From Podarcis muralis (taxonomy: Eukaryota): a stretch of 64,000 nucleotides of DNA. The position numbers and the translations under genes were made by a program. The notes under the pieces are model-generated. The model saw only the letters and a program-made list of their open reading frames with translations, had not been told where the DNA came from and made no database searches. The first letter of the stretch is position 1; each line of letters starts with the position of its first letter. Below, one piece after another: positions 725 to 41,863 of the stretch. The DNA lies in assembly GCF_964188315.1 (NCBI RefSeq), contig NC_135668.1, positions 30,008,001 to 30,072,000 on the forward strand. Direction: 5' to 3'.

Positions 725-2445
725 CTTCTCCTTGATGCCGGCCCAGATGATCCGGGTCATCTCGTCACCATCCATCTCCACCACAGGGTTGGCAACTTTG
801 ATCCTTTTGTCAGCATCTGTGGAGAAATGTCAGAATGCTGAAGAGACACCAGAGACAACCTCCAGCACCCAAACAATTGTGTGATGTGGGCTGTGCCAGG
901 GTGCAGATGCTAGAACCACTGGAAGAAAAATCCCAGGGCCTTGGCGTGTGTCTCTATCCCAGCACACCACTCTCAAAACAAATCCTTGTTGGGGTCTAGA
1001 GACTGATAAACTGGAAGCTGCCTGCGCTTCTCCTGCAAGCCTTTCCCCCTTCGTGTATGTAAACAGCAACTGACGACGGTGCTTCTTAAGAATCTGAAGT
1101 ATTTCCCCAGCTCTACTGAGAATAGGCACAACACAGAGTGGAGCTAAAGCAGTCAGGCCAAGGTGCCTGCTGTGTCTACCCTGTGATTGACCCTGGCAGG
1201 AGAGAAAGTGAATTAACTGCTGCCCAGTGGCTCTCTAACTAATCCCAGCTGAGCCCAAAGCCCTGCTGACTTTCACAAGCCATAATCCAAGCACATTCGC
1301 CTGGGGTGAGGCTCCTCCGCTGGGGATCTGCCCGCAGCCCCTTTTCCACAGACTGGACCTGCAACTCCACGGCTCCAGCCAGCCGGTCAAGGGACAAGGT
1401 CACCCTCAGAGGACAGCAGGCACACCCTCCCTCTGCGGCTTCCTCCCTGCCCCTCCGAGAGTGAGCTGGCAAGGCTCTCCAACAGGTCCTGGAGCCAGCT
1501 GCTAGCTGTTCAAAGCAGGAATGGCAGGGCAGGGGGCAGCCAAATCCTCTGTTCGAGATCCACACACAGAGGAAGGAAAAGGAGTCTTGGTCAAGCTGGA
1601 AAGAGGCCTCCACAGGGGCTTACTTAGCCTTAGGGTGTCCATGTGGGGCTCCAGGAGGGGGGGGGGGTCTTCCATGGCGACACAGAAGCAAAGCAACTGC
1701 AGGCCTACATTCCCAGGCCTGGCACAGCCTCAATGAGTCAAGCACCTATATGCAGGCAGGGTCTTAATGCCCCCTCCAGGCCAGCTGTGTGCTGTGCCAG
1801 TTTCTGCTCCATGCAACAGGAACCCGCCAAGCTGGCAAGCCTTCTGCCCGCCAACCCCCCCACTCCGGGCCACTTTCGAGACGGGGCAAAAGAGGGGCTG
1901 GCATGTGGGCCTCGCGTCCCCCAGCTGCAGGTCTCCCAGGAGAGACAATCTGCTCTCCTCCTCCAAGTCTCCCGGTGCCCCGAGGCCGCCCCGGAGTTGA
2001 GCGGGAGCGGCTCCACCCGAGGCGGCTCTAAATATAGTCCCTGGGGAGGCCCAGCATGGCAGGCGGGGCCGAGCGAGCCCAGGCGCAGAGGAAGGCAGCC
2101 GGCGGGGCCCGGCGGGGCATCGCAAGGTCACCGGCGGACAGGGGGGCCGGGGCGCTCCAGGACCCCGCCACACAAGGGCACGGCCATGGCGCCGGGCATC
2201 TTGGAGGGGGCAAACGCCTGGCCGGCTTCTGCGGGGCTAGAGAGGTGGCTCCCGGAGGGGACAGCGCCGGGACCCTCTGCTCTAATCCCCCTCCCTCTTT
2301 CCTCCGCTCCCCCCCCCCCCCGCCACTCACAGTGCCGGTGCGGCGGGCGCTGCGAGACGCTCAGCACCGGGAGCAGCGCGGCAGGAGAGCGGCCCAAAGC
2401 GGCCGAGGCGACGGCCGGAGCAACAGCGCGGAGGTAGTGGGCCAT
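725..2445 (-). CDS. IDH2: Isocitrate dehydrogenase [NADP], mitochondrial; exons 1-2, gene continues left of the window
   Basis: Exon 1 2445-2331 (115 nt, [38 protein letters not shown], transit-peptide-like, donor GTGAGT). Exon 2 816-725 (92 nt, [31 protein letters not shown], acceptor ACAG, donor GTACCT). [14 protein letters not shown] is the eukaryotic NADP-IDH signature; phases fit. Confidence 0.97.
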
Positions 2446-3350
2446 CGTGGCGGCGGACGGAGGAAGAGGAAATGGAGGACGTGCAGGCGGCAGTGGCGGC
2501 GGCGGCGGCAAAGAGGAGAAGCCGAGCAGCCGAGGCGCGCCAGGCGGAGCAGATGGAGCGGCCGCCCGCCTGCCCTGCCCCCTAAGTCACCGCGCTTTGG
2601 TAACCTCCCCGTCGGGGCGGGGCGCCGAGGTCCGAAGCGGACCACCCGGGAAATGGACACGCAGCGGCAGCAGCCATTGTTCTTTTACTGCCCCTTTGGC
2701 TCCCGTGAGTGCCACGCTCTTGCCCTCCCTTGGGCGACAGCATCTCCACTGCCTTTGTTGCCCGCCCCCGCCCCCCCGCGTTACAAATGTGTCCTTCGCG
2801 GGGGCACTGGGCGGTGGGGTGCCCTAGACGCCCAGCACGGAGGGCTACCCAGCTCACTCCCCACTGCTTCGCCTTGTGCTTGGGTAACAGTAGCTGCAAC
2901 CGCCAGACAGGCGGGCGGGCGGGAGCGCCAAGGCCAGGCCTGGCTGCTGATAAAAGACATCCATCGAGACGAGAGACGAAGGCCAGCTTCCCAGGATGCG
3001 CTCCTGTGCTGGACGTGGCCTGCCTGGGCCGCCGTCGGGGCTGAAGGGCATTGGTAGAGCCGGAGGGCATTGCGCCATTTGTTTGCACACTGACGGCAGC
3101 CGCCGGTCGCCACTAATCCAGGAGCTCGCAGCAAGTAGCCCCGGGGAAGAGGGGCCGGAGCGGAGCAGACCAGGGTCCAGGCTGGGCTGGAAGGGCAACC
3201 TTGGCACCCCTGCCTTGCAGGGTGGTGCCCAAGAGAGAAGCCCCATGGGGACTTCCTACGAGGGCCCCTGCTTCCATTTCGCCTGGAGGTGCAAGAAGCC
3301 CTCTTGATAACCCAGCCAAAGGGAGGGGGGAGCCCCTTTGGGAAGGCAGG
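1900..3350. promoter_or_regulatory. CpG island / promoter of IDH2
   Basis: Very GC- and CpG-rich tract spanning IDH2 exon 1 and its upstream region; boundaries approximate. Confidence 0.8.
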
Positions 3351-6300
3351 CGCTGGGCCTGGAGGGTTAGTACCCGCGGACATGGTGGGGGTCGGAGCTG
3401 GCACTGAGCACAGTGCAATCCAAGCAGCCCTTGCTTTGCTCTTGGCTTGAACCACCCAGGGTCAGCACTGGCTGAGCTGTTAAGGTCAAAACACAAGAAC
3501 AGTCTGGCTGCTGGATCAGTCCAAAGAGGGGCCACCCAGAAACCCCAAAAAGAAGGCCATGATCCCCAGCAGCTAGCATTTAGAGGCATCCTGCCTCTGG
3601 CAGTGGAGGTAGCGCAAAGCAATCTCTTCCTTCAATTTCTTTAATCCTTGTATCTGTGGTCAGCCTCAGTTGGAACACATCGCTGTTAAACATCTGTTAG
3701 TCTGCCCCTTATATAGAGACCCAAAAGATCGTTTTCTGAAACCTTTGTTCACAGAAGCAAGCAGGTGCATCCCGGCAGAAACGGTCTAGTTTCCTTTGGG
3801 TGACAATACAGTAATAGCTTTGTAACACACAGCGTGGCCCTCTATTCACCAGCTGCAAATAACTTATCAGGAAAAGGGAGTTCAATAGAACACTATAAAG
3901 TTGTGGTGAGGTTTAATTTTAAATCAAACTGGATTTGAGTTTGTGGGTGTATCTGGCAACCTCTGTCTTACATCACTGATGTTGCCTCATATTATGGATG
4001 TATGATCTCTATTGTTTTATTGGGACTGTGGCTGCAGGTTTCTAGCCTTTGGCTAGAACAATAAACTTTGATTGACTGACACAGCCTGGACCTCGCATGC
4101 TCTCAGGGCAGAAACACAAGAAAGGAGTCACACAAACACACTCACCAGCAACACCACCAATCAGGAAGCAGCCTGCTAAGACCACCCCAGCTTGAGATTG
4201 GGGAGAGAGGAGGAGTTGCCCCTCTGCCCTCTTGGCTGCAAGGCCTCAGCCAGCAGAGCAGTTGAGCAATTTAGACTTTGGACTTAATTCAGTTTAATTC
4301 TGCCCATCACCCCCTTTAGAGTTGTGTGCTGACTGTGTATGGGGTGGCATTGTCCTGCCCATTCTGCCAAGTGGGGGCTTCTGCCCCAAAGCTCTGCCTC
4401 AAGGGCACCATATAGCTGACCCCTACACCTCCACCCATCAAAGTGCCAACCAAACGGGAGCTGGGGAGTCCAGCAGCATGTAGAGGGCCAAAGGCTTGCC
4501 CCACTCCAGTCCTGGTGGAGATGCCACTAAGTTTGATGGGCCAATGTTCTTGACTAGATCAGAGGCAGCATGCATGGACTGCAACTCCCATCAGCCCCAG
4601 GCATAATGAGGCAACAGTGAAGGATGATGGAAGTTGTAGGCAAAGGTCTGCTTTGGAGGTTCCCCTTACCCAGCCTTGCCTACCCAGTGGCTGGCCAGTT
4701 GGACATCCCCCTGGGGAAGAGAGGAGAGGGGGGCAGGAAGTCTAGGGGGCACCAGGGCAGAGCCAGGGTTCCCTGTGTGTGTGAGAGAGGGAATCTCCAG
4801 GGCTGTAGGGGTCACTCAGTCTGGGCTGCACTGCCTCATGCTGAGTGTGAGCACTTGTGACAACAGAATATAACTGCTTCTTTCCTACATGCTCAAAATT
4901 CCTTGACCTTTTCATGCATGAACAGACCAGCCGTCTGTTCTTCGGCTGCTTTCAGTTCTCTGTAATGGATTCCCATCCTTTAGACTACCTATCTGTGAAA
5001 TGGGTAGATGTCTTCTAGAATGACTGTGCATAAGACTGCACTGGACCTGCAGCTTGACATGCTATTTGCCACAGGGCTCACCAGCTGCTTGAGACACCTG
5101 CACTGGGCTCACTCATAGTTGCTACTCATGAGACAATTGGCATCTGAACTGTGTTGTGCTGCTTGGCCATTGGAGATTAGAAAGCACATGTTTTTTGGCG
5201 AACTTCATCCTTGAAGCACCAGCCTCTGCTTCTTGCCTCCTGGGCATGGCTTGTTTGCCCTGAGCCACTGGGCTCCTCCCCTGGCAGCATGCTGGGCTCC
5301 AGGCAAGAGCTGGCCGCTCTGGCCATGACTGGCTTCATCTTGGAGGAGGCCTCCTTGGTGCTGGACAGGCTTAGGCAATGGATCCAGGAGGGGAGAGGGC
5401 TCGTGTGCTCGAATTCTGCTTTCAGGTTTCCCACAGCAGTGGCTGGCTGCTGTGGGTAGAGGATGCAGGACTACATGAGCCCATTTGGCCTGATCTGGCA
5501 GTTTCTTCTTATGTTCCTAGTATTATTTGATTGACTGAGCCAAGGAGCCAGACCCAGAGGCACTCCAAGAGGCCAGCCTGTTTACCTCCCCTACTTAGGA
5601 AGAGGCTTGGTACTGCTCTCCTTCTTACTTGGGCCTCCTTGACTCTGCTTCCCACGGGGCAGGAAAGGGTGCCAGTTTGGCACCCTGGTTGGTTGCAGGC
5701 AGGGTTGGGCACCCTTCCATGCAAACTCTGCATTTTGCCCAGGATCCCTTTCAACAGCAGCTGTGATCTTCTGGAATTGCCAGCCTCGCCAACTTTCAGA
5801 CAAAATCTTTTAATTGAGCACAGACTTGATGACTTAACAGACATTAAAGCACAAAGTTTCCTCATAATTACGGCGTGTAAAATCTTCTCATGGGTTGCAA
5901 AAGTTGTCTTGTTGGATTTAGGCACCGCCTAGACTGTGGTCCTTTGCAGACCGCAATGTGCTTTTCAGGCAGGCCTGGAGAGACAATACGTGTCTCTCAG
6001 CTCCAAGATTAGGCATATTGCATGTTTAGGAGAGGGTGAAAATGGAGTGGCTCTGGCTGCAAAAACGGCACCCCACCCCACCCCCTGTGCCTATACACAA
6101 TGTGTGGCAATGCACAAGTGGCTCTTCTGACATCTCTCACAGAATTAGAGTGAGAAAACGGAAATAGAATCTACACACATATAAAAAACCCACTGTGAAA
6201 ATGCTTTTCTAAAGACCGTTTTGAAAAATACATTGAATTTGCCATTGCTCACTGTCACTATCTAGTGTCACACAACACACTTAAAACGTTTTATTTGCAG

Positions 6301-6877
6301 CTGTGCAGCTGGAGTCCTAGCTCTTGGCAAGACCCCTGAACCTATTGGAACAGGCTGCATATACACACCCTGCTTCTGGACAAACCGAAAACTCACAAGT
6401 GTCTAAATCTGAGGCCCAATTTGAGCTTGAGGACCCTGGCCAAATGGCCATCCTGCCTGCCCCCCCCCCATCGCCCTAATTGGCCCTGATTGTAAAAAGA
6501 TGCAGCCACTCACCAGTAGCAATGATGGCTAGATTCTGGCATTTCTTCTTACCTTCTACTTACCTGTGGTGCAAATATCTTCCGCACTGCATGTACCCAG
6601 AGCCTGAGGTTGCATCTGCAGCATGGACAGATTTGCAGGGTCTGTAGGTCCATGTGTGTTTATGGTACAGAAGCAAAAACACTAGCTTAGATCCAATGAA
6701 GCCGTGTTTGTCTCTTGGACAAACTGGAGGCAAGATTGCAACTTTTTTCATGTGCAGATATTTATAAAGATTCTCTCAAAAAAAAAACCCCACCTATGCT
6801 GCTTGCTAAGGTTCATGCCCATATGGCAATGCTTTCAAAACCAGGATGGTTTAAACAGAAATGTGTCAACTGGATTA

Positions 6878-6995
6878 CAGAGGTTGGATGGCCTCCTGTC
6901 AGGGATTCTTTAGCTGTGATTCCTGCATTGCAAGGGGTTAGACTAGATGGCCCTTGGGGATCCCTTCCAACCCTACAATTCTATGAGTCTATGAT
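6878..6995 (+). mobile_element. CR1 LINE 3' end fragment
   Basis: Ends with GACTAGATGGCCCTTGGGGATCCCTTCCAACCCTACAATTCTATGAGTCTATGAT, the typical CR1 3' terminus with (ATTCTATG)n-like tail. Similar pieces at about 19100-19260, 22780-22930, 33130-33203 and 37265-37400. Confidence 0.75.
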
Positions 6996-8468
6996 CTGGG
7001 CTTGGAAAGTTCGGTTTTGGTCCCATTATATAAATGAACCAATTTATTTGGGATTGGGATTGGTGACTAAAAGTTGCTAGTCTGCATTAGAGTCCTCTTG
7101 TGGTTCTTATTGTGTCTTATTGGTGCATGGTGATTTTATTTAATTTAATTGGCATCTGTGTGTTCCAGACTGGAAGAGAGGTGGGAAGGAAAAGTCACAA
7201 ACAAGCAGAAATAATCTCAGAAGCTTTAAGGGGGGGGGGTATTGACCAGTGAGAACAAACAGGCACCCAAATGCAGAATAGCCAATGGTCAGGGGAGATG
7301 GGAATTGTTGTCCAATAACATCTGGAGAGCCCCCACAGGATACCCCTTCCTACCTAAAGGGCTCCCCAGACAGAAAGGAACACCTGAAAAAAGGAGAAAC
7401 TAAATACTTAGTGGGACGGAATGGGACATAGCATCAGTTGGAGAGCAGAGCAGGAAAGAACAGCCCAGGAAACAAGCAAACAAAGCCAACCCATGACTTC
7501 TCTTGAACTTATAACACATGATAAGCTTCTAAGCTTGACCACTCAGACAGCAGTTAAATGAGGTCCAGGCAACTCTTAAACAAACTGCAAACATAGGAGA
7601 TAGCGCAGCTGAGCTGCAGAACAAAGTACACGATGCGTTGTAAAAATATAAATGAAGAGTATCTCAAACAAGAAGACCTTGAAAAAGATGGCCACCTAAA
7701 GCTTCATTTTCTGACTTTGCTAAAGCAGTAGGGGGTTCAGGCACAGAAATCTCCCTTGGAAGTTGACTTGGCCAGCTCCTGGAACTGGAAGAAATGGGCA
7801 AGGCCTCCATGCACTGAAGGTAAGTCCTGAGCAGGCTTGGAAGCTGGTGCCTCTGAGCCCTGACATGTCTGCGGCCTCCACAATAAAGCATACACGATCT
7901 TTCTCCTCTCATGGAGAAGCAAAGATCCCAGTGGAGGGGACTTGCAAGATTTTTGCACAATAAAACAAAGGAGACAATATTAGCTGAAGCCAGAAAAAAG
8001 ATGCTCACTCAAAGAATTGATTCTACAAACTCCTTTCCTGAAAAATATTTTTATACCACCCTTCATGAATAATACTATGGTGGTTCAAAACAATGCAATT
8101 ATATTAAAACTGGTACATTAAAATATATACAGTAATAAAATACATCACAGGCCAGTCAGATGTCACCCAAAAATGCCTTCTGGGTTGACTTCAGCAAGCA
8201 GGAAAAGCCCATCAACGCTGGTGCCTTATTTCAAAGGAGAGGCCATTCCAGAAGCTGGGTGCCACAACAGAAAAGTCCCTTATTTGGGTTGTTGCAGGAA
8301 GGATCTCAGCACATACGCAAGAGAAGCTCATCCAAGGATCCTTGAATTGGGCTGGTACATACAGGAGAAGGCCTTCCTTCAGGTTCTCTCACTTCATTTA
8401 TACATCAAGAAAAAGAAAGATAAGCACAATATTTAAGGAAACAGGGTTTTTTTATCACCATCATCCAC

Positions 8469-8610
8469 TTTGCATACAGAAGGTCCTAGGCCCAATTTCT
8501 GGTGGCATTTCCAGGTAAGGATGGGAGATAACCCTGCCTGAAACCCTGGAGAGTTTCTGCCAGTCCGTGTAGACAGTGCTAAGCTAGATGGAACAATAGT
8601 CTGGCTCCGG
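8469..8610 (+). mobile_element. Squam3-like tRNA-derived SINE (partial)
   Basis: Contains CCTGCCTGAAACCCTGGAGAG...GTGTAGACA...CTAGATGGA, shared with copies at 38088-38285 and about 63575-63760. Confidence 0.65.
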
Positions 8611-8837
8611 GAAGGACACTTGCTGTGTCTCTGTTACTTTTTCTCTCTCCGTTTTGTCTTTTGCTTCACAACCGGCCTGGAGAACCTGGAATCTCCCTCC
8701 CTCCCTCCCTCCTGCCCTTTCTCCTAGTGAAGGGGTTGCTCTCTTGTGGTTTGGAGGTGTTCTCTTCCCTGCAAGAACCAATACAGCTCAGGACACATTT
8801 TGCTCTTTAACCTTAGTTTTCTTTGGCTGGTTTTCTT

Positions 8838-9292
8838 TTATTTTTTTAAAAAAGATATTTATTAGAATTTTACAACATGAAAAAAGAAAAATACAAAATA
8901 AAAATAGTTAAAAAAAAAAACCATTCCATCTTTTGATCACTTATCTTTCATTTGCTTGTTTCCCGGACCTCCTCACACCTCCCTTTTTGTATTCCCGTTC
9001 AATTTGTTAGTTCAGCAAATCCTTTCCCTCTTTGTTTATCCTAGTCTTTAATCTTAAAATATTGTAACATTAAGTTTTTGTCTGTTAATAGTCCATTTTT
9101 TCATACTCCTTATAGCGTTATAGCTAAAAACCACATAACTTTTTATCCAACATCATTCTAACATTCATTAATTTTACAATATTTCTGTAGGTAATCTTTA
9201 AATTTCTTCCAATCTTCTTCCACCGACTCTTCTCCCTGGTCTCAGATTCTGCCAGTCATTTCTGCCAATTCCATGTAGTCCATCATCTTTGC
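8838..9292 (-). mobile_element. 5'-truncated L1 LINE (ORF2 C-terminus plus 3' UTR)
   Basis: Minus strand reads KMMDYMELAEMTGRI*DQGEESVEEDWKKFKDYLQKYCKINEC*, then an A-rich 3' UTR/tail. Flanked by direct repeat CTGGTTTTCTT at 8827-8837 and 9293-9303 (TSD). Confidence 0.8.
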
Positions 9293-9422
9293 CTGGTTTT
9301 CTTGGCATAATTCTTGGTGGGTTTGAGCTGGAAGCCAAAGACAGTAAATGTTGCTTTCCTTTCTTCTGCTGCTGGCATTTCGCCAAGGAAGATCACTGGA
9401 ACAGACACCTGTCCTTGTAGGG

Positions 9423-10290
9423 CATGGGTTGGCAAACTAAGTTCCACGGGCCAGTTCAGGCCCAATTGCCTTTTAGATCCGGTCTGCGGACGGTCCAGGA
9501 ATCCAGACAGTCAGCGTAGTGCGAGAGCGCGCATGATGGTTTTTGTGACTCAGCCAGGCTTGGGGGTCAAAAGTGAGGCTAGTGGCTGCTCAAGACAAGC
9601 CCCTTCTTCGTCCTCATGCATGCGCAGCAATCATATCTTCCAGGGTTGGGGGTGGGGAAGAGGGAAAAGGAGCCACAGTTTGGATTTCCACCATGGAGCT
9701 GCCGGCAACTGACCTCAAGAAGGGCAGTTGCGGCGGCAGGGGCTTGGAGGCGCCTCGGGAGCGATGCCCGCTGGTGTCTGTGGCGGCGGTGCTCCCCACC
9801 AAAGGAAGCGGGGAGCACCTGGGAGGCTGCACTCCAAAGCAGTTCTGCGCTCTGCTGGGGAGGCCGCTCGTTAGCTACACGGTGTGAGCCATGGAAAGGT
9901 AAATAGCCCGTCGTCGCCTCGTCTTCCCTCACGCAGGGAAAAGAACATTTTTGCTTGAGCGGCACTGGCCTGACTTAGCGTGGCCAACGGCTTTTCCCTG
10001 CACACACGCTCTCCAGGGCTGACAGAAATGGCGCACTTACCTCAGCCTCCCACCCTGCCTTGTGAGAGAAATAATAACTGTCAACGATTAAAACGCAAAT
10101 GAAGCAGCGTGGGTGTATGTGGGAACACCCCCCCCCCAAAAAAATCACATTTGGGCAACGTTGGGGTTGGTCCCAATAAGGGTTTTTGCCAGAAATGTGG
10201 GCCATAATCATGGCAACATAGAGTCCGGCCCCCTACAAGGTCTGAGGGACAGTGGACTGGCCCCCTGCTGAAAATGTTTGTTGACCCCTG
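9423..10290 (+). mobile_element. Non-autonomous hAT element carrying a captured CRPPA 5' gene fragment (Pack-TIR-like)
   Basis: Imperfect TIRs CATGGGTTGGCAAAC (9423) and reverse complement CAGGGGTCAACAAAC (10290). Perfect 8-bp TSD TTGTAGGG at 9415-9422 and 10291-10298. The first ~80 nt and last ~70 nt align to the empty MITE at 39179-39428; the interior is unrelated to it. Confidence 0.9.
9693..9898 (+). pseudogene. CRPPA: Non-processed copy of CRPPA (ISPD, D-ribitol-5-phosphate cytidylyltransferase) exon 1 with premature stop
   Basis: From CCACCATGG: [68 protein letters not shown], matching CRPPA [41 protein letters not shown] (human sequence recalled from memory). TGA at 9885-9887. Phase-2 donor AG|GTAAAT at 9899. 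No other CRPPA exon in the window. Confidence 0.9.
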
Positions 10291-10299
10291 TTGTAGGGG

Positions 10300-11400
10300 C
10301 TTCCCTGGATGAACAAAGGCGCCCCTCCAGGAACCAACCGCCTTATAGGGCTCCATGCGCATCCCGCCATTGCCCACGAGAGGGCGCTGCTCTCTCGCTC
10401 CGTGGCGGCGCCACTTGCTTTCACCTTCGGAAATCCCTTCGATTAATTCCGCATCCTGGAAAATCCTCCCTGCAGGAGCGCCCCCTGGAGGGCATTGATC
10501 GGGTTGCATAAAGAAATGGAAGGGAGCGGTCTCTGCCCGCAAGCGGCTTACAATCATCCTAATAGGCAGCAGGGAATGCTATGGGCGGGGGAGGGGAAGG
10601 ATTTGAACTCGACCCAACCTGGGAGTGGGGAGGAAGCAAAAATCGGGGGCGGGGCTCCTGCTGCTGTCCTCAATGCAGCCCTGGGGGGTTGCCGCTGCTC
10701 CGAGCGGTGGTCAGAAGGGAATCCCACTCCCCCCTGCCAAGAATCAGCCCCACACCTCTCCCTCTTCCACTTCCCCTGACAGAGATTAACGCGCGCCTTG
10801 TCCGTTTCCTCTACTGATTTGGCCAGGAACCGAAAACGGGGGGCGCAGGGGGGGTCTCTCTTGCTGTTTGAAAGGGACCTTCTTTTGCAGCATCTTCGGC
10901 TGACCGGGGTGAGGGTCGTGCTTACCTGCCATAGGGATAGGAGGCGATTCTATCCAGGGGGGCTGGGTGACATTTCGGGGTCCCGCCCCCTCCCCAGCCT
11001 CCGAGCAGCCCGCCACACCCCCGCCTCTGCATTGTGTGGACCCCTCCCCGTATTCAAACCCCCCCCCCCATCTCCTCCCTTTCTTGATGTCACCAGTTGG
11101 TCTGGAAGCACCGCCCCGATCCCTCCCCCCACCCCGACGGCGCCCCGCGATTCCGGCACAGACAGGGAGGGACGCACCACAAAGAAAGGCGACGGCGGGC
11201 CACGGCAGGAGAGGCTGGGGCCGGGGAGAAGGGGTCGCGTCTGTGCAGGAGGTGAGAGAGAGAGAGGCGGGCGGGCGGGCCGGGGGTGTCTCTGCCTTCA
11301 AAGGCTGGCTCTGTGACGGGACTCAGCCCCGAGACCTGTTAGCAGCCAAGACAGACAGTGCCTCTGCCCATGTGCCGAGAGTCTTTTTTCCCGGCAGAGG
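10300..11400 (+). promoter_or_regulatory. GC/CpG-rich element, candidate upstream alternative promoter of SEMA4B
   Basis: CpG-rich. GC box GGGGCGGGGC at 10646-10655, CTCF-like motifs at 10374-10387 (+) and 10478-10491 (-), possible donor GAG|GTGAGA at 11252. Confidence 0.5.
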
Positions 11401-12707
11401 CAGGACAGGCGGAGGGAAGCCCCTCTTCCCTGGCACAATAGCACACCAGGAATTTTGCCCTCCCCCCCCCAAGAGAAACCCCCTGCAGTTATCATCGAAA
11501 TTTAGCGTGGGAGGGGCAGAGGCATTTTATATAGCTAAAGGGCTTCCGAGATTTGGGGTGTGTGTATGGCCGTCTGAATAGCTCTTTTCAACATTGGAGG
11601 GGCGCAGGTGATGGCCCCTCTGGCGCCCCCCCCCCAAGTTTAGCCTTAGGCTGGTGATGTGACAACCAACAGAGCTTGTAACGGAGCTGGGACTGACCCC
11701 TCCTGAACTCTGGGGTTCAGCCGTGGACCTTGGCAAGCGAAACAACCTGATGCCCACGTGCCCCACCCATCTCAGCATGACGCTGGACCAGACCCCCGGT
11801 CACCCCACAGCCAGCCCTCAAGGGCCACCCTGAGGCAAGGAGAGGAAGGCATCACAAGCGGGGTTCGAATGCCCCCCATATCGCCTGCATTTGCAAAACC
11901 CTTCATCTGCTGTTCCCCCACACCAGGCTGTGCTGCCAATCTGGGCACCCATTAACAAATGTTTGTATCTGTCTTGGATAGAGCATGCTTGCCAACTCAG
12001 ATTTTGCCACAGAAGCTGTGAACAAAAGTGCATTTCGGAAGGACTGTCTGCCACAGGGGGGCAGCGCAGAGAGAAAGAGAAAGGGAGAGTGGGAAAGAAA
12101 GAGAGAGACTGTCCCCACCAGAACCCTAGGAGAGCACCTGCTTTATAGGCACATATTTTTTAATTCCTTTTATATTCAATCTTGTTCTCCAGTGAGTTCA
12201 GGGTAGTGTATATGGTTCACGCCTCCTCAATTAATTCTCTCAAACTTGAGGCCCCATCTGTTGTTGGACTACAACTCCCATCATTCCTAGCTAGAGCACC
12301 TGTGGTCAGGGATGATTGAAGTTGTAGTCCAACAACAGATTAGTGTGTCAGACTAGGACCCGGGAAACCAGGGTTCAAATCTCCATGAAGTTCATTGGGC
12401 CAGGTACTGTCTCTCAACACATAGTTGTTGTGGATCGGGGATCCACATGCACACCACCTTGAGCTCCTTGGAGGAAAAGCTGGGATAGAAATGCAATAAA
12501 CAAATGCCAATCATCCCCAAAACCTCTTTCCTGCTGCACCAGCTGCCCATGTTGCAGAGAACTTTGCACTTGTGGACAGTGGACCGTGACATCTTGAGAG
12601 CTTTAGACTGGGGAAGGCTGAGATAGACCACATCTTTCAACTATTCCAACTTGGTTGGGAATTTTCATATCTAAAACCTTATTTCCTTCTCTCCCCCCCC
12701 CCCCCAG

Positions 12708-19700: not shown

Positions 19701-20149
19701 GCAGGCCTGCCTCTCTGAGGCTGCCCTGCTGGTTGGCCCCACAGCCTGTGTGTCTCTCCCTCTCTGTTTGCCAGCCCTGCCTGGGCGCTCTGCCAGGGCG
19801 GGGTGGGCACGGTGCCCAGGAGAGCAGGGAGATTAGCCCAGAGTTCAACAATGCCCACAGGGCAGAGGAGCTGCCAGGGAGGTCTGGCCCAGTGCGGGGG
19901 GCAGGGGGCATGCGGACACTCCCACCCCTTGCTTCTCATCCAGTGGGGTGTTCTTGAGATGCCCCCATTCAACCTAGCTCCTGGGAGAAGCAGGCATGGA
20001 GCCCAAGGAAGAGTTGGGAGGAGAGGGGGTGGGGTGGGGCTGCCTTTGTCATAGTGCCCCGGGGGGAGGGAGGTTGCTTTTGGCCCAAGAGACTCTTTTG
20101 TTTTGGGCTGCAGTTTTGGGGTTGGCGGGGGGTATCACCCATGGGTGCT

Positions 20150-21060
20150 AAAGCTGTCGCGTGCTTTGGTTCGACGGCACCGCCAGGCGAAGCCCCAACG
20201 AGAGTAGCTGCCTAGCTCGGGATTGGGGCGTCAGATTTGGAGGGCGGGAGAGAGGAGGAGGAGGAGTAACCGCATGGGGGTGGTGCGGTTCTGGGAGAGA
20301 TTAGCAAAGGGACGTTCAGGGCTGCTTTCAACGGCCGGGGGAAGATGTTGGGGCGGGGCCGGCCCTCGGAGCTTCACCCACATCTCCTCCTCCTCCCTCT
20401 CCCTCTCCCTCTCCCTCTCTCTCAGGTCCGGACCTGTCTCTTCCCGAGGGAGGGGGCGGAGGCGCGGCCACTCCCGCCCCGACGGGGGAGGAGGAACCAG
20501 AAAGAGCAGCAGTCCGAGCAGCTCCGAAGTTTTGCAACTTGATCTGCCTGCCTGCCTGGTCGAGCGAGCAAAGCCTCCGACGCTCCGCAGCCCGCCGCCG
20601 CTGCTGCTGCCCAGGCCCCGCTCCCCTCGGACCCACTGCGCCATGGGGCTCCGGGAGTCGGCGCTGCTGCTGTTGGGAGCGCTCCTGGCCGCCGCTGCCG
20701 AAGAGGAGCCGGTGCCGCGCCTGAGTCTGCGCCTCGGTAAGCCTGAGAGGTCGGGGGCGGCCCAGCCACAGCGGAGGCCCCGTCGAGGGATGCTCCTGGC
20801 CGGGGAAGCGGCGGGGGACCGGACCGACGCTGCTCTCTCGGCCTGCCCCTTCGGGGTCTGATTGGTGGGAGGCGCTGATATTTCACGCTGCTGGTGGGGA
20901 GAAGGAGATCTCCGCGGGCTGATGGGGTGTTTTAGTATCTTGCGGGGGCTCGAGGGCGCGGAGCCCAGGGTCTTTTCCTTTTGCTCTTTGTAAAGCACCT
21001 CGAATACTGACACTCACACCCCGAATACCGTGAGCGGCCCCGTGAAGAGGTTTTCCCTTT
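20150..21060. promoter_or_regulatory. CpG island at the SEMA4B first coding exon
   Basis: CpG-dense tract around ATG 20643. Includes a (CTCCCT)n tract ending in an AG acceptor at 20424-20425. Confidence 0.8.
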
Positions 21061-24000: not shown

Positions 24001-27000
24001 CTCTGTGAGTGTGTGCACACACACTGTTGCTTGGAGTCCTATTGCAATGGCATTTGGAGGACAACACAAGAGTAGCAGAGAATCCTCAGAACTGGGAAAT
24101 CTGGCAGCACTAATGCAGAGATGTTTTTATATTCAGGCTTATTTAGTTCATTAAATTTATATAGTACTTGATTGTAGAAAACCTCAAAGTGGTTTACAGA
24201 AAGAATGAAACAGCAAGGTCATTAACAAAGCAATTAAAACATTCAAAAAATTAGAAAGCAGCAATGAACTAACAAACACATCAGCATTCTAACATGTCTG
24301 GGTAGGCTTGTCTGAAAAAAAAATGTTTTCAGCAGGCGCTGAAAGGCATCTGCCTAATGTCAACAGACAAGGAGTTCCAAAGTTGTAGGTGCTGCCACCC
24401 TAAAAGATCAAATTACTATAAATGTGGAACAGATATTATGTGCCGCCTGTAACAGTGCCATTTTGTCAGATCAAAATGGTCAAGAGGTCACATATGGAGT
24501 AAGGCAACCTCGCAGGTAGACTGGTTCCAAGTTATTAAGGGCTTTATTTGTATAGTAATACAGTGGTACCTCGGGTTACATACGCTTTAGGTTACAGACA
24601 CTTCAGGTTACAGACTCCGCTAACCCATAAATATTACCTCAGGTTAAGAACTTTGCTTCAGGATGAGAACAGAAATCGTGCGGCGGCAGCAGGAGGTCTT
24701 ATTAGCTAAAGTGGTGCTTCAGGTTAAGAACAGTTTCAGGTTAAGAATGGACCTCCAGAATGAATTAAGTACTTAACCCTCCATACAGGTACCACTGTAG
24801 TAACACCTTGAACCTGGCCTGGTAGCAAATTGACAAACAATGCAGGTCTCTGAGCACATCTGTTAATATGCTGGCCCAGTCTCACTGTCAGTATTATGCT
24901 GCAGTATTCAGCTTCACACAAGAGATCTCATGAACTCAAACAAAACCATATTTGGAATAAGAGATTTTTTAAAAAGTGGATGGATGCACAAATATCAGTA
25001 CAACTGAGCTCAGCTCTCCCTCTTCCCAGTACACTGACTATATTGGAACCAGGAAGTCAGCTCTTAGAGAAATAGTAATCTTTGGTATCACAGATTCCAT
25101 TCATCACTCAGAGACGAAAGTGTTAGTAACCTCCCAGGCACGTGGTCAGATTTGTTAGCTAGTTTCTTCCTGCTTCTGGGAGGCCACAGGGCTGGAAAAG
25201 TTGGGGCAACTGAGACAGGATGGAGGAAAGCTCTTCTCTCTTGAGAGACACAATTGCCTTCTAGGGCAGTTGCAGGAGCTCCCAGTGTTTACAGAGGTGG
25301 CCTGTGTGAGCTGCTCTCTTGATTGGAGGACTTTGCTGTCGCTCTGTGTTGGAGTGGGGAGGGTCGGGCATGGTTCACTCTTGTTATATGTCAGGAGACA
25401 GAGATCATGTGTGAAGAGGGTGACTTCAAGAGCTTAGAACATCCTTCCCTGGGGCCTCCTTGAAGTCAGGATGTGGCTAGCTTCTCATTGCTGTGACAAA
25501 TCTAGGCAGCAGATTTCTGTAAGTTGAACAGTGTTGTTCCTGAATGTTTGTCGTCTTGTAGTATTTGGAGGAATCTTGGGGCGCTTCCAGATGAGGGTGT
25601 CATGTTGCAAATGAGCCATTCAGATCCAGTTTCTTGGTACATTCTCTTCCATACACTGTTTGGGTATTTGTTGCTGCACATTCTGGTGGGCAGAGATTGA
25701 TGGAATATATTTGTGCTGTTCTGGACCTGCACACAGGTTTTTCTGTACCTGAGCACATGCAGGTTGTTTTTTTAAAAAATAATAATCACGAGAAGCACAC
25801 AAGCAAATGTCAGCAGCTGTTAATTATCACATTTCACAAAAGGCCAAATGGAGGGCTGTGCTTTTGTCAGGGAGCAATATCCATTTCCATTTGAGTTTTT
25901 AAAAAATAATACTGAGGTCTTGCACAAGAGTGATTTCAGGTGACAAGGAGAAGTGGAGTTGAGTGTCATCAGCAAATCAATAGCACCTCTCTGCAAATCC
26001 CCTGTTGATGGTATCAAGCAGCTTTGTAAAGATAATAAAAAGCTGGGGGTGGGGAATATTGTGGGACCCTCAAAGCACAAATGCAACTGAGTTAAGCGGA
26101 AAACTACCACGTTATCTTCTGAAACTGCCTCCGCAGATAGGAGCAGAACCTCCACGTCTCATGAGTCCCCTATTCCCAATTACAGGTTTGGTCCAGCAAT
26201 ACACTGTGGTCAGTGATATCAAAAGATATCAAGAGTTTTAGGAGGGTCAAGAGAGCCACAGAGGTCATTTATCAGGGCAACCAGGGTGTTTTCAGTACCA
26301 AAACTGAGCTTACACCCAGCTTGAAATGGATCTAGATCCTCGGTGTCCTTCCAAGATGCCTGCAGCTGAGTTTTTCCAAGTTCCTGCCCCAAGGGAGTAT
26401 CTGGACAGTAAATGGCCATATTTCTTGGGTCCAAAGTGGACTACCCACTCTCTGAAAGAGGTGTTGCTCATCTCTCAGACCATCTAGCTCAAGGATCAGC
26501 AAACGTTTTCAGCTGTGGGCCGGTCAGACCTTTGGGGGGGTGGACTATATTTTGGGGGGGAAATGAACGAATTCCTATGCCCCACAAATAACCCAGAGAT
26601 GCATTTTAAATAAAAGCACACATTCTACTCATGTAAAAACATGCTGATTCCCCAACATTTAGGCCGGATTTAGATGGCTCCGAGCCTTAGTTTGCCTACT
26701 CATGATCTAGCCAATGCCACTCATCCCCTGGCTAGCGGTCAATAGCCAAGACGGGTAAGGATCAAGGGTGTGGTCAGCCACACCTTTGCCAGATTCTTTA
26801 TTCATATCCTCAGGCTGCTTCAGTTGAAACTGATCCCATAAAGAGACTTGACATCTTCATAGGAGCTGCATCCAAGTTGGTCAGGTTCACAGTCAATACA
26901 AACCACTTTAAGACACAAATGTTTCACGTCGCTTTCCTCCAATAAGGTCCCTGCTAAGACTGCTCTGTTTTCAGTCTTCCCTAGAGACTGCAGTGACTGT

Positions 27001-39000: not shown

Positions 39001-41863
39001 AAATCCCACCTCTTCTCCCTGGAGCTCAAGGTGGCTTAAATGCTTCTCCTCCTCTTCATTTAATCCCCACAACCACCCTGTAAGGTAGGCTAGGCTGAGA
39101 GATTGTGATGGGCCCAAGGTTACCCAGTAACCTTGGCCAAGTGGGGATTTTGAACCCTAGTCTCCTGACTCTCTAACCCAGGAGTCAGCAAACTTTTTCA
39201 GCAGGAGGCCAGTCCACTGTCCCTCAGACCTTGTGGGAGGGCCGGACTATATATTTTTTAAAAAGTGAACGAATTCCTGTGCTCCACAAATAACCCAGAG
39301 ATGCATTTTAAATAAAAGCACACATTCTACTCATGTAAAAACATGTTGATTCCCAGAGTGTCTGCAGGCTGGATTTAGAAGACACTTGGGCCAGATCCGG
39401 CCCCCGGGCCTTAGTTTGCTTACCCATGCTCTAACCACTACACCATCCTTTACTGCAAGTGTAATCCCAGACTGTCTTACAAATAAAAGTGAACCCAGTT
39501 ACACCCTCAAAGGACTCAAAACAAGGCAGGTGTTTCCAAATAGGCTGCCAGGGAAAATTCTTCTGGGCATCCTGGGCCTCTGCTCTGTAACGTAATACAA
39601 CTTGGGACCAAGCTAGATGTGAGCATCTGGGATGCAGGATCTTGCCTCCTCCCATTGGGTGGGTGGATGGGGAGGGAAGTACAATTTGCATCTAGCTACA
39701 TCTCTTTTGACCCCAAGTCTAACCGTCTTCCACCAAACCTGTCTCAAGTCCAAAATTAAAAGCCCATTAGATGTCCTTCCTGCCACACTGTGGCTTTTCT
39801 AGGCCCGGCTCTTGCAACTTGGCATGACAGCACCACCCCTCACCCCTCCCTCCCTCCCTTTCTCTCCCTGCCAGGGCGACGTTGGGGGTGAGCGGGTTCT
39901 CCAGAGGCGGTGGACGACCTTCCTGAAGGCCCAGCTGCTGTGCTCACACCCCGAGGACGGCTTCCCCTTCAACGTGCTGCAGGACATGTTTGTGCTCACC
40001 CCAGGCGAGAGCTTGGCAGAGACCGTCTTCTACGGGGTCTTCACCTCTCAGTGGTGAGCAGTGAGAGGAGGCTGCCTTTGTGGGCTGCCAGGTTCTCTTG
40101 GCAGAGGGCACTTGGTGCATGCCCCATTACTTCTGCATGCCTGTGGGTCCTTGACTGCCCCAGTTATATATTTATTGTCAATTTTTATTCATTTTTCAAA
40201 TGTATAACACATCAACGCCAAATTAAAACCAATACATTCCCCCCCCCAAAAAAAAACTGGCTTTGCACTCTCTCAGATATTTCCATTTCTTACCCTTTTA
40301 CATGCTGTTTATTTTACAGATTTATCTCTAATTAACACCTATTTTTCTTTAGCAAATTCCTCATCTCTCAGCTGTGCCTTTACCAGCTCCTGCATATAGA
40401 TCAAACAAAATTATATCAAATGAGAAATGAGGTTATAGTAGTTTAAATCTTTCATTCGTCTTTCTCAACTGTCCCATCCTTGACCCTCCTTCTCCTTCCT
40501 CCTCTTTCCCAGGGATAGGAAGGGCGCTGGGGGTGCTGCAGTCTGTGCCTTCTCCATGGCAGATGTGGAGGAAGCCTTCAGTGGGCTGTACAAGGAAGTC
40601 AACCGGGAGACCCAACAGTGGTACACGGACACCCACCCTGTGCCGGAGCCCCGGCCTGGAGCGGTATGTCCGTCACCCAGCAACCAGCTCCATGGGCTTG
40701 GGGGCGGGAAGGCCTTGGGACTGATGCTGGTGGGTCTGCCTGCCCTCCACCTTGAAGGCTACTAGGCTGCCTTCGGCTTTTGCCTGAGATCCTGCAGAGG
40801 GTAGGGGCTGCCAGAGTCCAGTGCTGGGCAACTTAAGCTGCTGCCATGCACCCCTTCGCTTCAAGATGGCTCTTTCCTTTTAATCCCCCTGCCCACAGTG
40901 CATTAACAGCCAGGCCCGGCGGATGAAGATCACCTCCTCACTCCAGTTGCCTGACCGGGTGCTCAACTACCTCAAGGACCACTTCCTGATGAGCAGCCCC
41001 ATTCGGAGCCAGCCACTCTTCCTCCTGCAGGGTCATGCCCGCTACCAGCAGATCAGCGTCCAGCGTGTCCAAGGCCTGCACCGGGCCCACGATGTCTTGT
41101 TCTTGGGCACAGGTGGGTGGTGGCAGCGGCGGCTGGGAGGAGGGAGGCAGGGGGAGGCCCTCAGGCAGTGGCTGGAAGGATGGACCCTCCAAGGTGCTAG
41201 CTGCCTCTTACCTGCACTTCCTGGATATAATACCGTATTTTTTGCTCTATAAGACTCACTTTTTCCCTCCTAAAAAGTAAGAGGAAATGTGTGTGCGTCT
41301 TATGAAGCAAATGAAGGTTGCACAGCTATCCTAGAAGCCAGAACAGCAAGAGGGATCGCTGCTTTTGCTGTGCAGTGATCCCTCTTATTGTTCTGGCTTC
41401 TGAGATTCAGAATATTTTTTTTCTTGTTTTCCTCCTCCAAAAACTAGGTGCGTCTTATGGTCTGGTGCATCTTATAGAGTGAAAAATACGTATATCCTTA
41501 TTATATATATATGGGACGCGGGTGGCGCTGTGGGTAAAACCTCAGCGCCTAGGACTTGCCGATCGCATGGTCGGCGGTTCGAATCCCCGCGGCGGGGTGT
41601 GCTCCCGTTGCTCGGTCCCAGCGCCTGCCAACCTAGCAGTTCGAAAGCACCCCCGGGTGCAAGTAGATAAATAGGGACCGCTTACTAGCGGGAAGGTAAA
41701 CGGCGTTTCCGTGTGTGGCTCTGGCTCGCCAGAGTAGCTTCGTCATGCTGGCCACGTGACCCGGAAGTGTCTGCAGACAGCGCTGGCTCCCGGCCTAGAG
41801 AGAGATGAGCGCACAACCCTAGAGTCTGTCAAGACTGGCCCGTACGGGCAGGGGTACCTTTAC

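What the first reader, a model, noticed from the sequence alone, without database searches (positions are those of the whole stretch)
9415..10298. Gene-capturing hAT transposon (Pack-TIR-like) carrying the 5' end of CRPPA/ISPD
Seen: an 868-bp element bounded by hAT-type imperfect TIRs and a perfect 8-bp TSD (TTGTAGGG). Its ends match the 250-bp empty MITE at 39179-39428, but its ~700-bp interior holds a Kozak ATG, a reading frame clearly homologous to CRPPA exon 1, and a GT donor followed by presumed intron sequence. Known: 8-bp TSDs typify hAT transposases. CRPPA normally lies in a different synteny block (SOSTDC1/MEOX2/AGMO region in human). Capture of host gene fragments by TIR elements is common in plants (Pack-MULEs) but rarely reported in vertebrates. 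Inference: the retained donor indicates DNA-level capture rather than retroposition. The intact TSD and distant parent gene suggest the loaded element may itself have transposed, so there may be a multi-copy CRPPA-carrying family in lacertids.
Basis: partly seen in the sequence, partly recalled or inferred. Interest (0 to 1): 0.92.

Follow-up and report, generated by a model that had tools for sequence, protein, structure and literature searches.

The report
Jumping gene carrying CRPPA's first exon
A small cut-and-paste (hAT) transposon in this lizard swapped its middle for the leader, first exon and start of intron 1 of the host gene CRPPA, then spread to several tens of copies, which is rare in backboned animals; this copy is a decayed, probably functionless member.

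Summary
Window 9423-10290 is an 868-bp non-autonomous hAT element with a perfect 8-bp target-site duplication (TTGTAGGG). Its 81-nt and 72-nt arms match the two ends of an 'empty' MITE family with two more copies in the window.

Its 715-bp interior is colinear with the CRPPA locus of four lacertids (5' leader, exon 1, first ~300 bp of intron 1) at 87-88% identity. This is DNA-level capture, not retroposition. No other CRPPA exon lies in the window.

The copy is decayed: CGA>TGA stop at 9885, catalytic-loop changes, and 24 parental CpGs lost.

Summed contig depth over the whole interior in four individuals is about 30-110 times single copy, and it continues into the right arm. A second copy sits inside a vomeronasal-receptor-like gene model of Zootoca vivipara and shares two derived residues with this one. 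So the loaded element itself transposed: a multicopy Pack-hAT family.

A tree places the capture near or before the Podarcis/Lacerta/Zootoca split.

Capture of a promoter is not shown. RNA gives no evidence that the captured splice donor is used here.

Earlier notes of this scan (unchecked) report other Pack-hAT families on other DNA of this genome (RANBP9, SIX5, PPAT).

Verdict: a real new member of a known, rarely multicopy kind.

The parts
9415..9422 (.). left copy of the 8-bp target-site duplication TTGTAGGG
   Evidence: (D5)
9423..9503 (+). left arm: 81 nt of one end of the hAT MITE. The terminal inverted repeat CATGGGTTGGCAAAC is at 9423-9437. ATC at 9501-9503 is shared with the parent gene (junction microhomology).
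9504..9692 (+). captured CRPPA 5' leader/upstream sequence, about 190 bp before the ATG. It carries an 8-nt insertion at about 9518-9525 that is private to this copy.
   Evidence: Alignment to L001-L004. The parent's mRNA covers at least from the 9551-equivalent position (X18 record 12).
9693..9899 (+). captured CRPPA exon 1 coding part, now a pseudo-exon. ATG at 9693; premature TGA at 9885-9887, where the parent has CGA; P-loop AGGSGER changed to TKGSGEH. It ends at the parent's exact exon 1 boundary.
9900..10218 (+). captured 5' part of CRPPA intron 1, starting with the GTAAAT donor. This copy has a 31-nt insertion and a 13-nt deletion relative to the parents.
10219..10290 (+). right arm: 72 nt of the other end of the MITE. 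The terminal inverted repeat is at 10276-10290 (its reverse complement reads CAGGGGTCAACAAAC).
10291..10298 (.). right copy of the target-site duplication TTGTAGGG
39179..39428 (-). 'empty' 250-bp member of the same MITE family, in a SEMA4B intron. TSD CTCTAACC at 39171-39178 and 39429-39436.
26490..26704 (-). third, internally deleted member of the MITE family. TSD ATCTAGCT / ATCTAGCC (7/8).

Best explanation
This is one decayed copy of a multicopy 'Pack-hAT' family.

1. A roughly 250-bp non-autonomous hAT MITE (8-bp TSD, CAGGGGT-type termini, tens of thousands of copies) suffered a break in a lacertid ancestor. (Family and copy number shown; the break is inferred.)
2. Repair switched template to the 5' end of the host gene CRPPA. 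It copied about 715 bp: 5' leader, the whole coding part of exon 1 with its ATG, the splice donor and about 300 bp of intron 1. It then switched back at short microhomologies (ATC on the left, A on the right). The MITE core was replaced, but both transposase-recognised ends were kept. (Inferred from structure.)
3. A hAT transposase supplied in trans mobilised the loaded element to several tens of sites. (Supported by depth and a second copy.)
4. This copy landed between IDH2 and SEMA4B, next to a CpG-rich stretch, and made the TTGTAGGG duplication. (Shown.)
5. It has since decayed by CpG loss, a CGA>TGA stop and indels. It most likely has no function. (Decay shown; lack of function inferred.)

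The cargo still offers an ATG, a cryptic acceptor and a real donor. Family members can therefore be exonised, as one is in a Zootoca gene model.
For: Structure:
- TSD, TIRs and arms.
- Each arm carries only one outer terminus. Together they make up the two ends of one MITE whose middle is missing.

Parentage:
- The interior is colinear with four lacertid CRPPA loci, including 296-319 bp of intron 1.
- Identity without gaps is 84.7% upstream, 91.8% in exon 1 and 87.2% in the intron.
- Lacertid-specific N-terminal residues are shared with CRPPA.
- Only exon 1 of CRPPA is present in the window.

Decay:
- 24 of 78 substitutions are parental CpGs lost in this copy.
- CpG count is 32, against 54 in the parent.

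Amplification:
- Summed contig depth over 9511-10217 is 30-116 times the single-copy flank in four individuals. Mean is about 56 times in X1.
- 20-36 distinct contigs carry variant letters at single positions.
- Identity of the laid contigs to this copy (99+ / 95-99 / 90-95 / under 90%): 63/129/252/135.
- Depth stays at about 49 times inside the right arm (10232-10243).
- Loose ends after 10233 read as arm sequence.
- Family-wide derived states at 9801 and 9836 differ from all four parents.
- XP_034992723.1 of Zootoca vivipara carries a copy inside a CaSR-like/V2R model. It shares V5A and R9K with this copy against all four parent genes.

Junctions: microhomology ATC on the left and A on the right.

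Precedent: template switching with microhomology is the published model for Pack-TIRs (PMC8277862).
Against: - No second copy was seen from TIR to TIR with its own TSD. Logan contigs break inside the high-copy arms.
- The left arm/interior junction of other copies could not be read, because alignments clip at about 9536 at this copy's private 8-nt insertion.
- The tool warns that summed contig depth is not a copy number.
- The autonomous partner was not sought.
- The capture mechanism is inferred from structure only, and microhomologies of 1-3 nt are weak evidence.
Confidence: 0.85

Rival explanations
1. In-place gap filling. An ordinary MITE inserted here first. A later break inside it was repaired with CRPPA as template, so this cargo-bearing copy never moved. 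This is the transposition-independent model that explains most single-copy animal Pack-TIRs.
For: The TSD is compatible with either order of events. This is the majority route in PMC8277862. Junction microhomology fits as well.
Against: The same cargo is present at about 30-110 times single-copy depth and runs into the same right arm in other copies. A copy with shared derived residues lies in an unrelated Zootoca gene. The parent gene is not nearby: no other CRPPA exon in 64 kb, and no overlap with L002. In-place filling shows a strong bias to sources within 5 kb.
Confidence: 0.06
2. Composite (macro-)transposon. Two separate MITEs flanking the 5' end of CRPPA were mobilised together with the DNA between them.
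For: L. agilis has a MITE of this family in CRPPA intron 1 (L003:7970-8281). Earlier notes of the scan mention composite hAT units elsewhere in this genome (unchecked).
Against: Each arm is only a half element (81 and 72 nt) with a single outer terminus, and the two halves are complementary parts of one MITE. None of the four parent loci has MITE sequence abutting the captured segment. The L. agilis MITE lies 4.3 kb away and only in that species. That is the density expected by chance: this window alone holds 3 copies in 64 kb.
Confidence: 0.04
3. The copy has been co-opted. Its captured leader, ATG (9693 or 9891) and splice donor serve as an alternative first exon or promoter for SEMA4B downstream. 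This is the reading of scan note s1-188964.
For: The copy is on the same strand as SEMA4B and directly upstream of a CpG-rich stretch. Its donor GTAAAT is intact and an ATG lies 9 nt before it. RNA contigs near-identical to this copy exist in two studies. The analogous HelibatN3 cargo works as an exon trap (PMC4778049).
Against: The TGA at 9885 stops any frame that starts at the CRPPA ATG. The longest RNA contig (496 nt, 98% identical) runs through the donor unspliced, and its 5' end is not in the window. Low-depth RNA contigs cross the arm/cargo junction, so they did not start at the cargo. A sample of about 1.9 billion letters of raw RNA reads gave only reads with the parent gene's letters. 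The sequence shows neutral decay.
Confidence: 0.05
4. Assembly artefact or chance resemblance.
For: None found.
Against: Contigs from four individuals of three or four studies reproduce both flank junctions. Identity to CRPPA is 88% over about 700 nt in four species, and the peptide hits human ISPD at E=2.6e-8.
Confidence: 0.01

Closest known systems
Pack-TIRs of animals, especially Pack-hAT such as Pack-hAT-N8_XT of Xenopus tropicalis (Tan et al. 2021, Nat Commun 12:4280; PMC8277862)
   Same: A TIR (hAT) non-autonomous element whose interior is replaced by host sequence with an identifiable, distant parent. It has a TSD, short microhomology at the breakpoints, cargo from a gene's 5' end, and more than one copy.
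   Different: That survey of 100 animal genomes found only 4 multicopy cases. The frog example has three copies and a 291-bp 5'UTR cargo. Here depth suggests several tens of copies. The cargo is about 715 bp and includes a complete coding first exon with its splice donor and intron. The host is a lacertid lizard, and 'lizard' and 'Anolis' do not occur in that paper's text.
HelibatN3 Helitrons of vesper bats carrying the NUBPL promoter, first six codons and splice donor (PMC4778049; PMC4224331)
   Same: A DNA transposon family built around the captured 5' end of a host gene (leader, start codon, splice donor) and amplified. Such cargo can create chimeric or exonised transcripts.
   Different: HelibatN3 is a Helitron (rolling circle, no TSD or TIR, capture by read-through), not a hAT. 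Its copy number is in the thousands. Its promoter and donor activity were shown experimentally. Here neither promoter activity nor donor use is shown.
Pack-MULEs and Pack-CACTA of plants
   Same: DNA-level capture of gene fragments, introns included, between TIRs, followed by amplification.
   Different: Different superfamilies (9-11-bp or 3-bp TSDs), in plants, often with cargo from several genes.
Other Pack-hAT families noted by this scan in the same genome (RANBP9, SIX5, PPAT cargos; notes s1-152505, s1-193659, s1-175883 and others)
   Same: Same genome, same kind of hAT MITE shell, and cargo again a gene's 5' end. Multicopy according to those notes.
   Different: Different parent genes. 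Those notes call their families young, whereas the CRPPA family looks old. They are AI notes that I did not check.

Membership tests
hAT superfamily, non-autonomous (MITE-like) element | 8-bp target-site duplication | tested here: met
   TTGTAGGG 8/8 here. The two empty family members in the window have CTCTAACC 8/8 and ATCTAGCT/ATCTAGCC 7/8.
hAT superfamily, non-autonomous (MITE-like) element | short terminal inverted repeats of the CAG(G/T)GGT... type | tested here: met
   CATGGGTTGGCAAAC against CAGGGGTCAACAAAC, 11/15, imperfect. That this type is typical of Charlie-like hAT elements is from my own knowledge.
hAT superfamily, non-autonomous (MITE-like) element | an autonomous partner with the same termini that encodes a hAT transposase | not tested
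   No lizard genome search was available. The window has no such element near the copy.
Pack-TIR (Tan et al. 2021) | both ends belong to one TIR transposon family | tested here: met
   The arms match the two ends of the MITEs at 39179-39428, 26490-26704 and L003:7970-8281.
Pack-TIR (Tan et al. 2021) | the interior is non-transposon host sequence with an identifiable parental copy elsewhere | tested here: met
   Colinear with the CRPPA 5' end in L001-L004. The parent is not in the window.
Pack-TIR, multicopy class (the loaded element transposed) | several copies with the same cargo junctions at different sites, each with its own TSD | tested here: inconclusive
   Depth is 30-116 times single copy and continues into the right arm. 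A second site exists in Zootoca. No second full copy with its TSD could be read.
Processed retrocopy of CRPPA | introns absent, poly(A) tail, variable TSD | tested here: not met
   About 300 bp of intron 1 follows the intact donor, there is no poly(A), and only exon 1 is present.
Functional CRPPA/IspD cytidylyltransferase paralogue | full IspD domain, intact frame, conserved P-loop (PAGGxGER) | tested here: not met
   Only the first 35 of 221 profile positions are present, at 19 bits against a cut-off of 27. The frame has a stop at codon 65. The loop reads TKGSGEH.
Mobile promoter/exon-trap cassette (HelibatN3-like) | the cargo starts transcription and its donor splices to downstream exons | tested here: inconclusive
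   An RNA contig reads through the donor. RNA contigs cross the arm/cargo junction. Raw RNA reads laid here carry the parent's letters only. One Zootoca gene model uses a copy as an internal exon. There are no 5'-end data.

The most novel reading that the evidence does not exclude
The CRPPA element may be one instance of a lineage-wide process. In this reading, lacertid hAT MITEs repeatedly copy the start-proximal, CpG-island 5' ends of host genes (leader, first exon, donor) and amplify them to tens or hundreds of copies. This would scatter ready-made first exons and cassette exons through the genome, at a scale not described for cut-and-paste transposons of any vertebrate. The bias to 5' ends would point to template switching coupled to transcription or replication at CpG islands.
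Probability: 0.25. Interest if true: 0.8.

Novelty: new member of a known kind. Interest (0 to 1): 0.6.

Why it matters
Gene-fragment capture by cut-and-paste transposons is a major source of exon shuffling in plants. In animals it has looked marginal. The one systematic survey found 370 cases in 100 genomes, and nearly all were single copies that never moved.

Here a hAT element carries a complete first coding exon with its splice donor. The parent locus is identified in four species, and the data indicate several tens of copies spread over at least two lacertid genera. This shows that loaded hAT elements can amplify in an amniote.

Together with the other cargos noted in this genome, it makes lacertids a natural system for two questions: how such captures arise, and whether the mobile 5' modules rewire genes.

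For genome annotation it is a warning. CRPPA-like exons in lacertid gene models, such as the Zootoca CaSR-like protein, are transposon cargo.

Tried and rejected
- First translation, PDB and Pfam calls were one base out of frame and gave only chance hits. Repeated in frame.
- Word-indexed protein search with the 64-aa peptide: nothing in the 35-112 aa length range.
- Searches with CRPPA N-terminal regions found only one chimeric gene model, in Zootoca. Its DNA is not on record, so that copy's arms and TSD could not be read.
- The P. muralis isoform X2 was not on record either.
- Look-up of the window's GDPGP1 ORF, to name the record and chromosome, failed.
- The two foreign ends of RNA contigs from run X25 are not in the window. 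They do not show splicing within this locus.
- Literature searches for a prior description of this family or of lacertid hAT capture found nothing specific.
- Search of the scan's notes by sequence was blank.
- Rejected: retrocopy, because the intron is present.
- Rejected: two independent MITE halves, because the arms are complementary halves of one element.
- Rejected: real CRPPA exons 2+ lying here.
- Rejected: the L. agilis intron-1 MITE as the source of the capture. It is species-specific, 4.3 kb away, and at chance density.
- I first read the locus start (3001) as the CRPPA transcription start. It is only the start of the annotated coding range, so no statement about the start site rests on it.

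Full report
WHAT IS THERE

The sequence shows TTGTAGGG at 9415-9422 and again at 10291-10298. Between them lie 868 bp (9423-10290). Its termini, CATGGGTTGGCAAAC and the reverse complement CAGGGGTCAACAAAC, agree at 11 of 15 positions.

BLAST of the element against the window and alignments locate the arms:
- 9423-9503 is 75% identical to one end of the 250-bp repeat at 39179-39428.
- 10219-10290 is about 90% identical to that repeat's other end.

The 250-bp repeat has its own perfect 8-bp duplication, CTCTAACC. A third, internally deleted copy at 26490-26704 has ATCTAGCT/ATCTAGCC. A fourth copy lies in CRPPA intron 1 of Lacerta agilis (L003:7970-8281).

Eight-base duplications and CAGGGGT-type termini are the marks of hAT elements (the TIR type is from my own knowledge). 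Each arm of the element carries a single outer terminus. The two arms are complementary halves of one MITE whose core of about 95-160 bp is missing.

THE CARGO

In frame from the ATG at 9693, the sequence reads 64 codons, a TGA at 9885, four more codons (AMER), then GTAAAT.

The peptide matches human ISPD/CRPPA (PDB 4cvh) at E=2.6e-8, and bacterial and plant IspD enzymes more weakly. Pfam IspD scores 19 bits, below its cut-off, as expected for 35 of 221 positions.

An exhaustive profile search returned CRPPA proteins of many vertebrates. A word-indexed search returned the lacertid orthologues. The N-terminus, which is poorly conserved between squamate families, is nearly the same as in lacertid CRPPA (84-88% identity). 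The source was therefore a lacertid CRPPA.

I fetched the genomic CRPPA loci of Podarcis raffonei (L001), P. muralis (L002), Lacerta agilis (L003) and Zootoca vivipara (L004).

Window 9526-10218, and with weaker similarity from 9502, aligns in a single block to the start of each locus. The block contains:
- about 190 bp before the ATG;
- the 207-bp coding part of exon 1, ending at exactly the parent's exon boundary;
- the GT donor;
- 296-319 bp of intron 1.

Identity without gaps to P. raffonei is 84.7% upstream, 91.8% in the exon and 87.2% in the intron.

This is a contiguous genomic fragment, so the capture was at DNA level and not through a spliced RNA. tblastn with two lacertid CRPPA proteins finds only exon 1 in the 64-kb window. 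Apart from dispersed repeats, nothing else in the window matches the CRPPA loci.

STATE OF THIS COPY

- The stop at 9885 is CGA>TGA at a CpG.
- Other CpG transitions give R25C, P27L and R42H.
- The nucleotide-binding loop PAGGSGER reads PTKGSGEH.
- 24 of 78 substitutions against P. raffonei are parental CpGs lost here, against 5 in the opposite direction. The CpG count is 32 against 54.
- Private indels: an 8-nt insertion near 9518-9525, a 31-nt insertion and a 13-nt deletion in the intron part.

This is neutral decay of a non-functional fragment.

IS THE ASSEMBLY RIGHT?

Logan contigs of four individuals from three or four studies bridge left flank, arm and cargo (9256/9260-9564) with 0-2 differences. 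Other contigs bridge the right arm and the right flank. No listed contig shows the empty site, although many rows were not shown. The insertion is real and present in all four individuals.

IS THE CARGO MULTICOPY?

Depth in the unique right flank is 112, 6.3, 15 and 9.7 in runs X1, X2, X7 and X9. Summed depth over 9511-10217 is 4,200-9,600, 376-734, 461-790 and 589-1,081. That is 30-116 times the flank.

On the shorter stretch 9478-10243, the X1 bins average about 56 times single copy. In total 579 contigs were laid. Their identity to this copy (99+ / 95-99 / 90-95 / under 90%) splits 63/129/252/135. At single positions 20-36 different contigs carry the alternative letter.

The tool warns that summed contig depth is not a copy number. 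I take it as 'several tens'.

Two points show that the extra copies are loaded transposons and not something else:

1. Depth stays at about 49 times inside the right arm (10232-10243). The equally short piece of the left arm shows only about 2 times, although that arm has about 340 times depth genome-wide. The right-arm depth comes from contigs anchored in the cargo. Loose ends after 10233 read as diverged arm sequence.

2. Most family depth carries A at 9801 and 9836, where all four parent genes have G. This points to descent from one master copy rather than repeated capture.

The left junction of other copies could not be read. Alignments clip at about 9536, where this copy has its private insertion. 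The clipped ends read as CRPPA-like leader.

A SECOND SITE IN ANOTHER GENUS

The best hit of the exhaustive search, XP_034992723.1, is an 'extracellular calcium-sensing receptor-like' protein of Zootoca vivipara. Residues 433-517 of it are the translated cargo: 21 codons of leader, the ATG, and exon 1 up to ...RAMER. They sit between the ligand-binding and seven-helix parts. The precomputed Pfam list has ANF_receptor and 7tm_3 only.

That copy keeps CGA (Arg) where this one has the stop. It shares Ala5 and Lys9 with the window copy against Val5 and Arg9 in all four parent genes. The two copies, at unrelated loci in two genera, therefore belong to one lineage of the family.

Its DNA was not retrievable.

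AGE

In a maximum-likelihood tree of the alignable 660 columns, the window copy sits on a long branch (0.10). It joins the internal node between (P. raffonei, P. muralis) and (L. agilis, Zootoca). It has 45 private substitutions and no state shared with a single genus beyond noise.

The cargo also keeps intron sequence that P. muralis (last about 40 bp) and Zootoca (last about 120 bp) have since lost from their own CRPPA.

Capture therefore happened near or before the split of these genera. The branch length is inflated by CpG decay, so I give no date.

HOW IT AROSE (INFERRED)

At the left junction, ATC (9501-9503) is common to the MITE (…GGGAATC|A…) and to the parent (…TATC|CAGGCAG…). At the right junction, a single A (10218) is common to both.

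Core replaced, ends kept, short microhomology: this is the signature of template switching during repair or replication. It is the model proposed for animal Pack-TIRs, in which multicopy cases need a subsequent transposition (PMC8277862).

The parent loci show no MITE abutting the captured segment. This argues against a two-MITE composite.

WHAT IT DOES NOW

No promoter is demonstrated. At least 142-157 nt of the roughly 190 bp before the ATG is transcribed leader in the parent gene. The evidence is an RNA contig of the true CRPPA from the 9551-equivalent position and gene models that start their coding range at the 9536-equivalent position.

RNA runs of two studies hold about a third of the cargo's words. 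Laid out, they give the following:
- A 351-nt contig carries the parent's letters. This is the real CRPPA mRNA.
- Low-depth contigs, 98-99% identical to this copy, include one that crosses the arm/cargo junction. That transcription did not start in the cargo, or the contig is DNA carry-over.
- A 496-nt contig, 98% identical, runs through the donor unspliced. Its 30-nt 5' end is absent from the window.
- A short contig is joined to a sequence that I recognise from memory as ribosomal protein S3 coding sequence (not tested). It is probably a chimera.
- About 1.9 billion letters of raw RNA reads gave four reads, all with the parent's letters.

There is thus no evidence that this copy's donor is used, or that it feeds SEMA4B as scan note s1-188964 proposes. 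The TGA would in any case end a frame begun at the CRPPA ATG.

The cargo does contain a good acceptor (…ttccag|G at 9642/9643), an open frame from 9549 to 9884, and the donor. This explains how a copy can be annotated as an internal exon in Zootoca.

CONTEXT

- IDH2 lies on the minus strand (exons at 608-829 and about 2300-2586, CpG island at 2000-3000).
- SEMA4B lies on the plus strand, with Sema-domain exons from about 35 kb.
- GDPGP1-like and TTLL-like genes follow.

The gene names rest on my recognition of the translated exons, not on a database search. The element sits about 7 kb from the IDH2 island and directly before a CpG-rich stretch at 10.3-11.5 kb.

COMPARISON AND NOVELTY

The element meets the defining features of a Pack-TIR of the hAT superfamily.

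In the only systematic animal survey, 208 of 370 Pack-TIRs were hAT, 13% carried exonic sequence, and only four were multicopy. The worked example has three copies.

The closest functional analogue is HelibatN3, a bat Helitron family built on the NUBPL promoter, six codons and a donor. It has proven exon-trap activity.

I found no description of this family or of lacertid hAT capture in the held literature.

Earlier notes of this scan report further Pack-hAT families with RANBP9, SIX5 and PPAT cargos on other pieces of the same genome, which they call Podarcis muralis. I did not check them. If they hold, the CRPPA family is one case of a wider lacertid phenomenon. That lowers its singularity but raises the interest of the whole.

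VERDICT

It is a new member of a known but rarely amplified kind, and this copy is a dead one. Interest 0.6.

Noticed in passing
window 8804-9308: Very high-copy dispersed repeat just left of the insertion. Summed depth reaches about 2 million against a single-copy depth of 112, and many contigs have loose ends at 8940, 9145, 9285 and 9289. Probably a SINE; not classified.
   Followed up: no
L003:7970-8281 (Lacerta agilis CRPPA intron 1): An empty MITE of the same hAT family lies 4.3 kb downstream of the segment that was captured. It has an internal duplication of about 60 bp and is absent from the Podarcis and Zootoca loci. I judged it a chance neighbour at the family's density.
   Followed up: partly
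L002:~3628-3670 and L004:~3394-3530: The parent gene's intron 1 has been rearranged in P. muralis (last about 40 bp of the captured segment replaced) and in Zootoca (last about 120 bp replaced). The transposon cargo preserves ancestral intron sequence that these species have lost. L. agilis has a (GCC)n expansion just after the donor.
   Followed up: partly
protein P0001 (XP_034992723.1, Zootoca vivipara), residues 433-517: A gene model of a CaSR-like/vomeronasal type-2 receptor uses a copy of the CRPPA cargo as an internal coding exon, where the cysteine-rich domain would be expected. No NCD3G domain appears in its Pfam list. Likely an annotation artefact or a disrupted gene.
   Followed up: partly
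RNA run X25, contigs laid at window 9512-9977 and 9948-9996: Two RNA contigs near-identical to this copy carry foreign ends that are not in the window: CGACAGCAGGAGACTACCTCTTCCAAAATG before 9512, just after an AG, and a sequence resembling ribosomal protein S3 mRNA after 9996. They are either a 98%-identical sister copy exonised elsewhere or library chimeras.
   Followed up: partly
window 9891-9899: After the premature TGA, an ATG in good context (gccATGg) lies three codons before the intact donor. This is the basis of scan note s1-188964. No spliced RNA was seen.
   Followed up: partly
window 10300-11500 and 20000-21000: Two CpG-rich stretches (observed/expected 0.5-0.8) lie between the element and the first Sema-domain exons of SEMA4B at about 35 kb. 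They are presumably the SEMA4B promoter or first exons. The element abuts the first one.
   Followed up: no
window 54956-56116 and 61400-62300: A 387-codon single-exon ORF resembles GDPGP1, and exons with TTLL (tubulin tyrosine ligase-like) motifs follow. With IDH2 at the left end, this gives the gene order IDH2 / SEMA4B / … / GDPGP1 / TTLL. An N gap lies at 43077-43207.
   Followed up: no
window 10345-10502: Run X9 differs from the window at six or more positions within 160 bp of the unique right flank. This is locally high population or lineage divergence.
   Followed up: no
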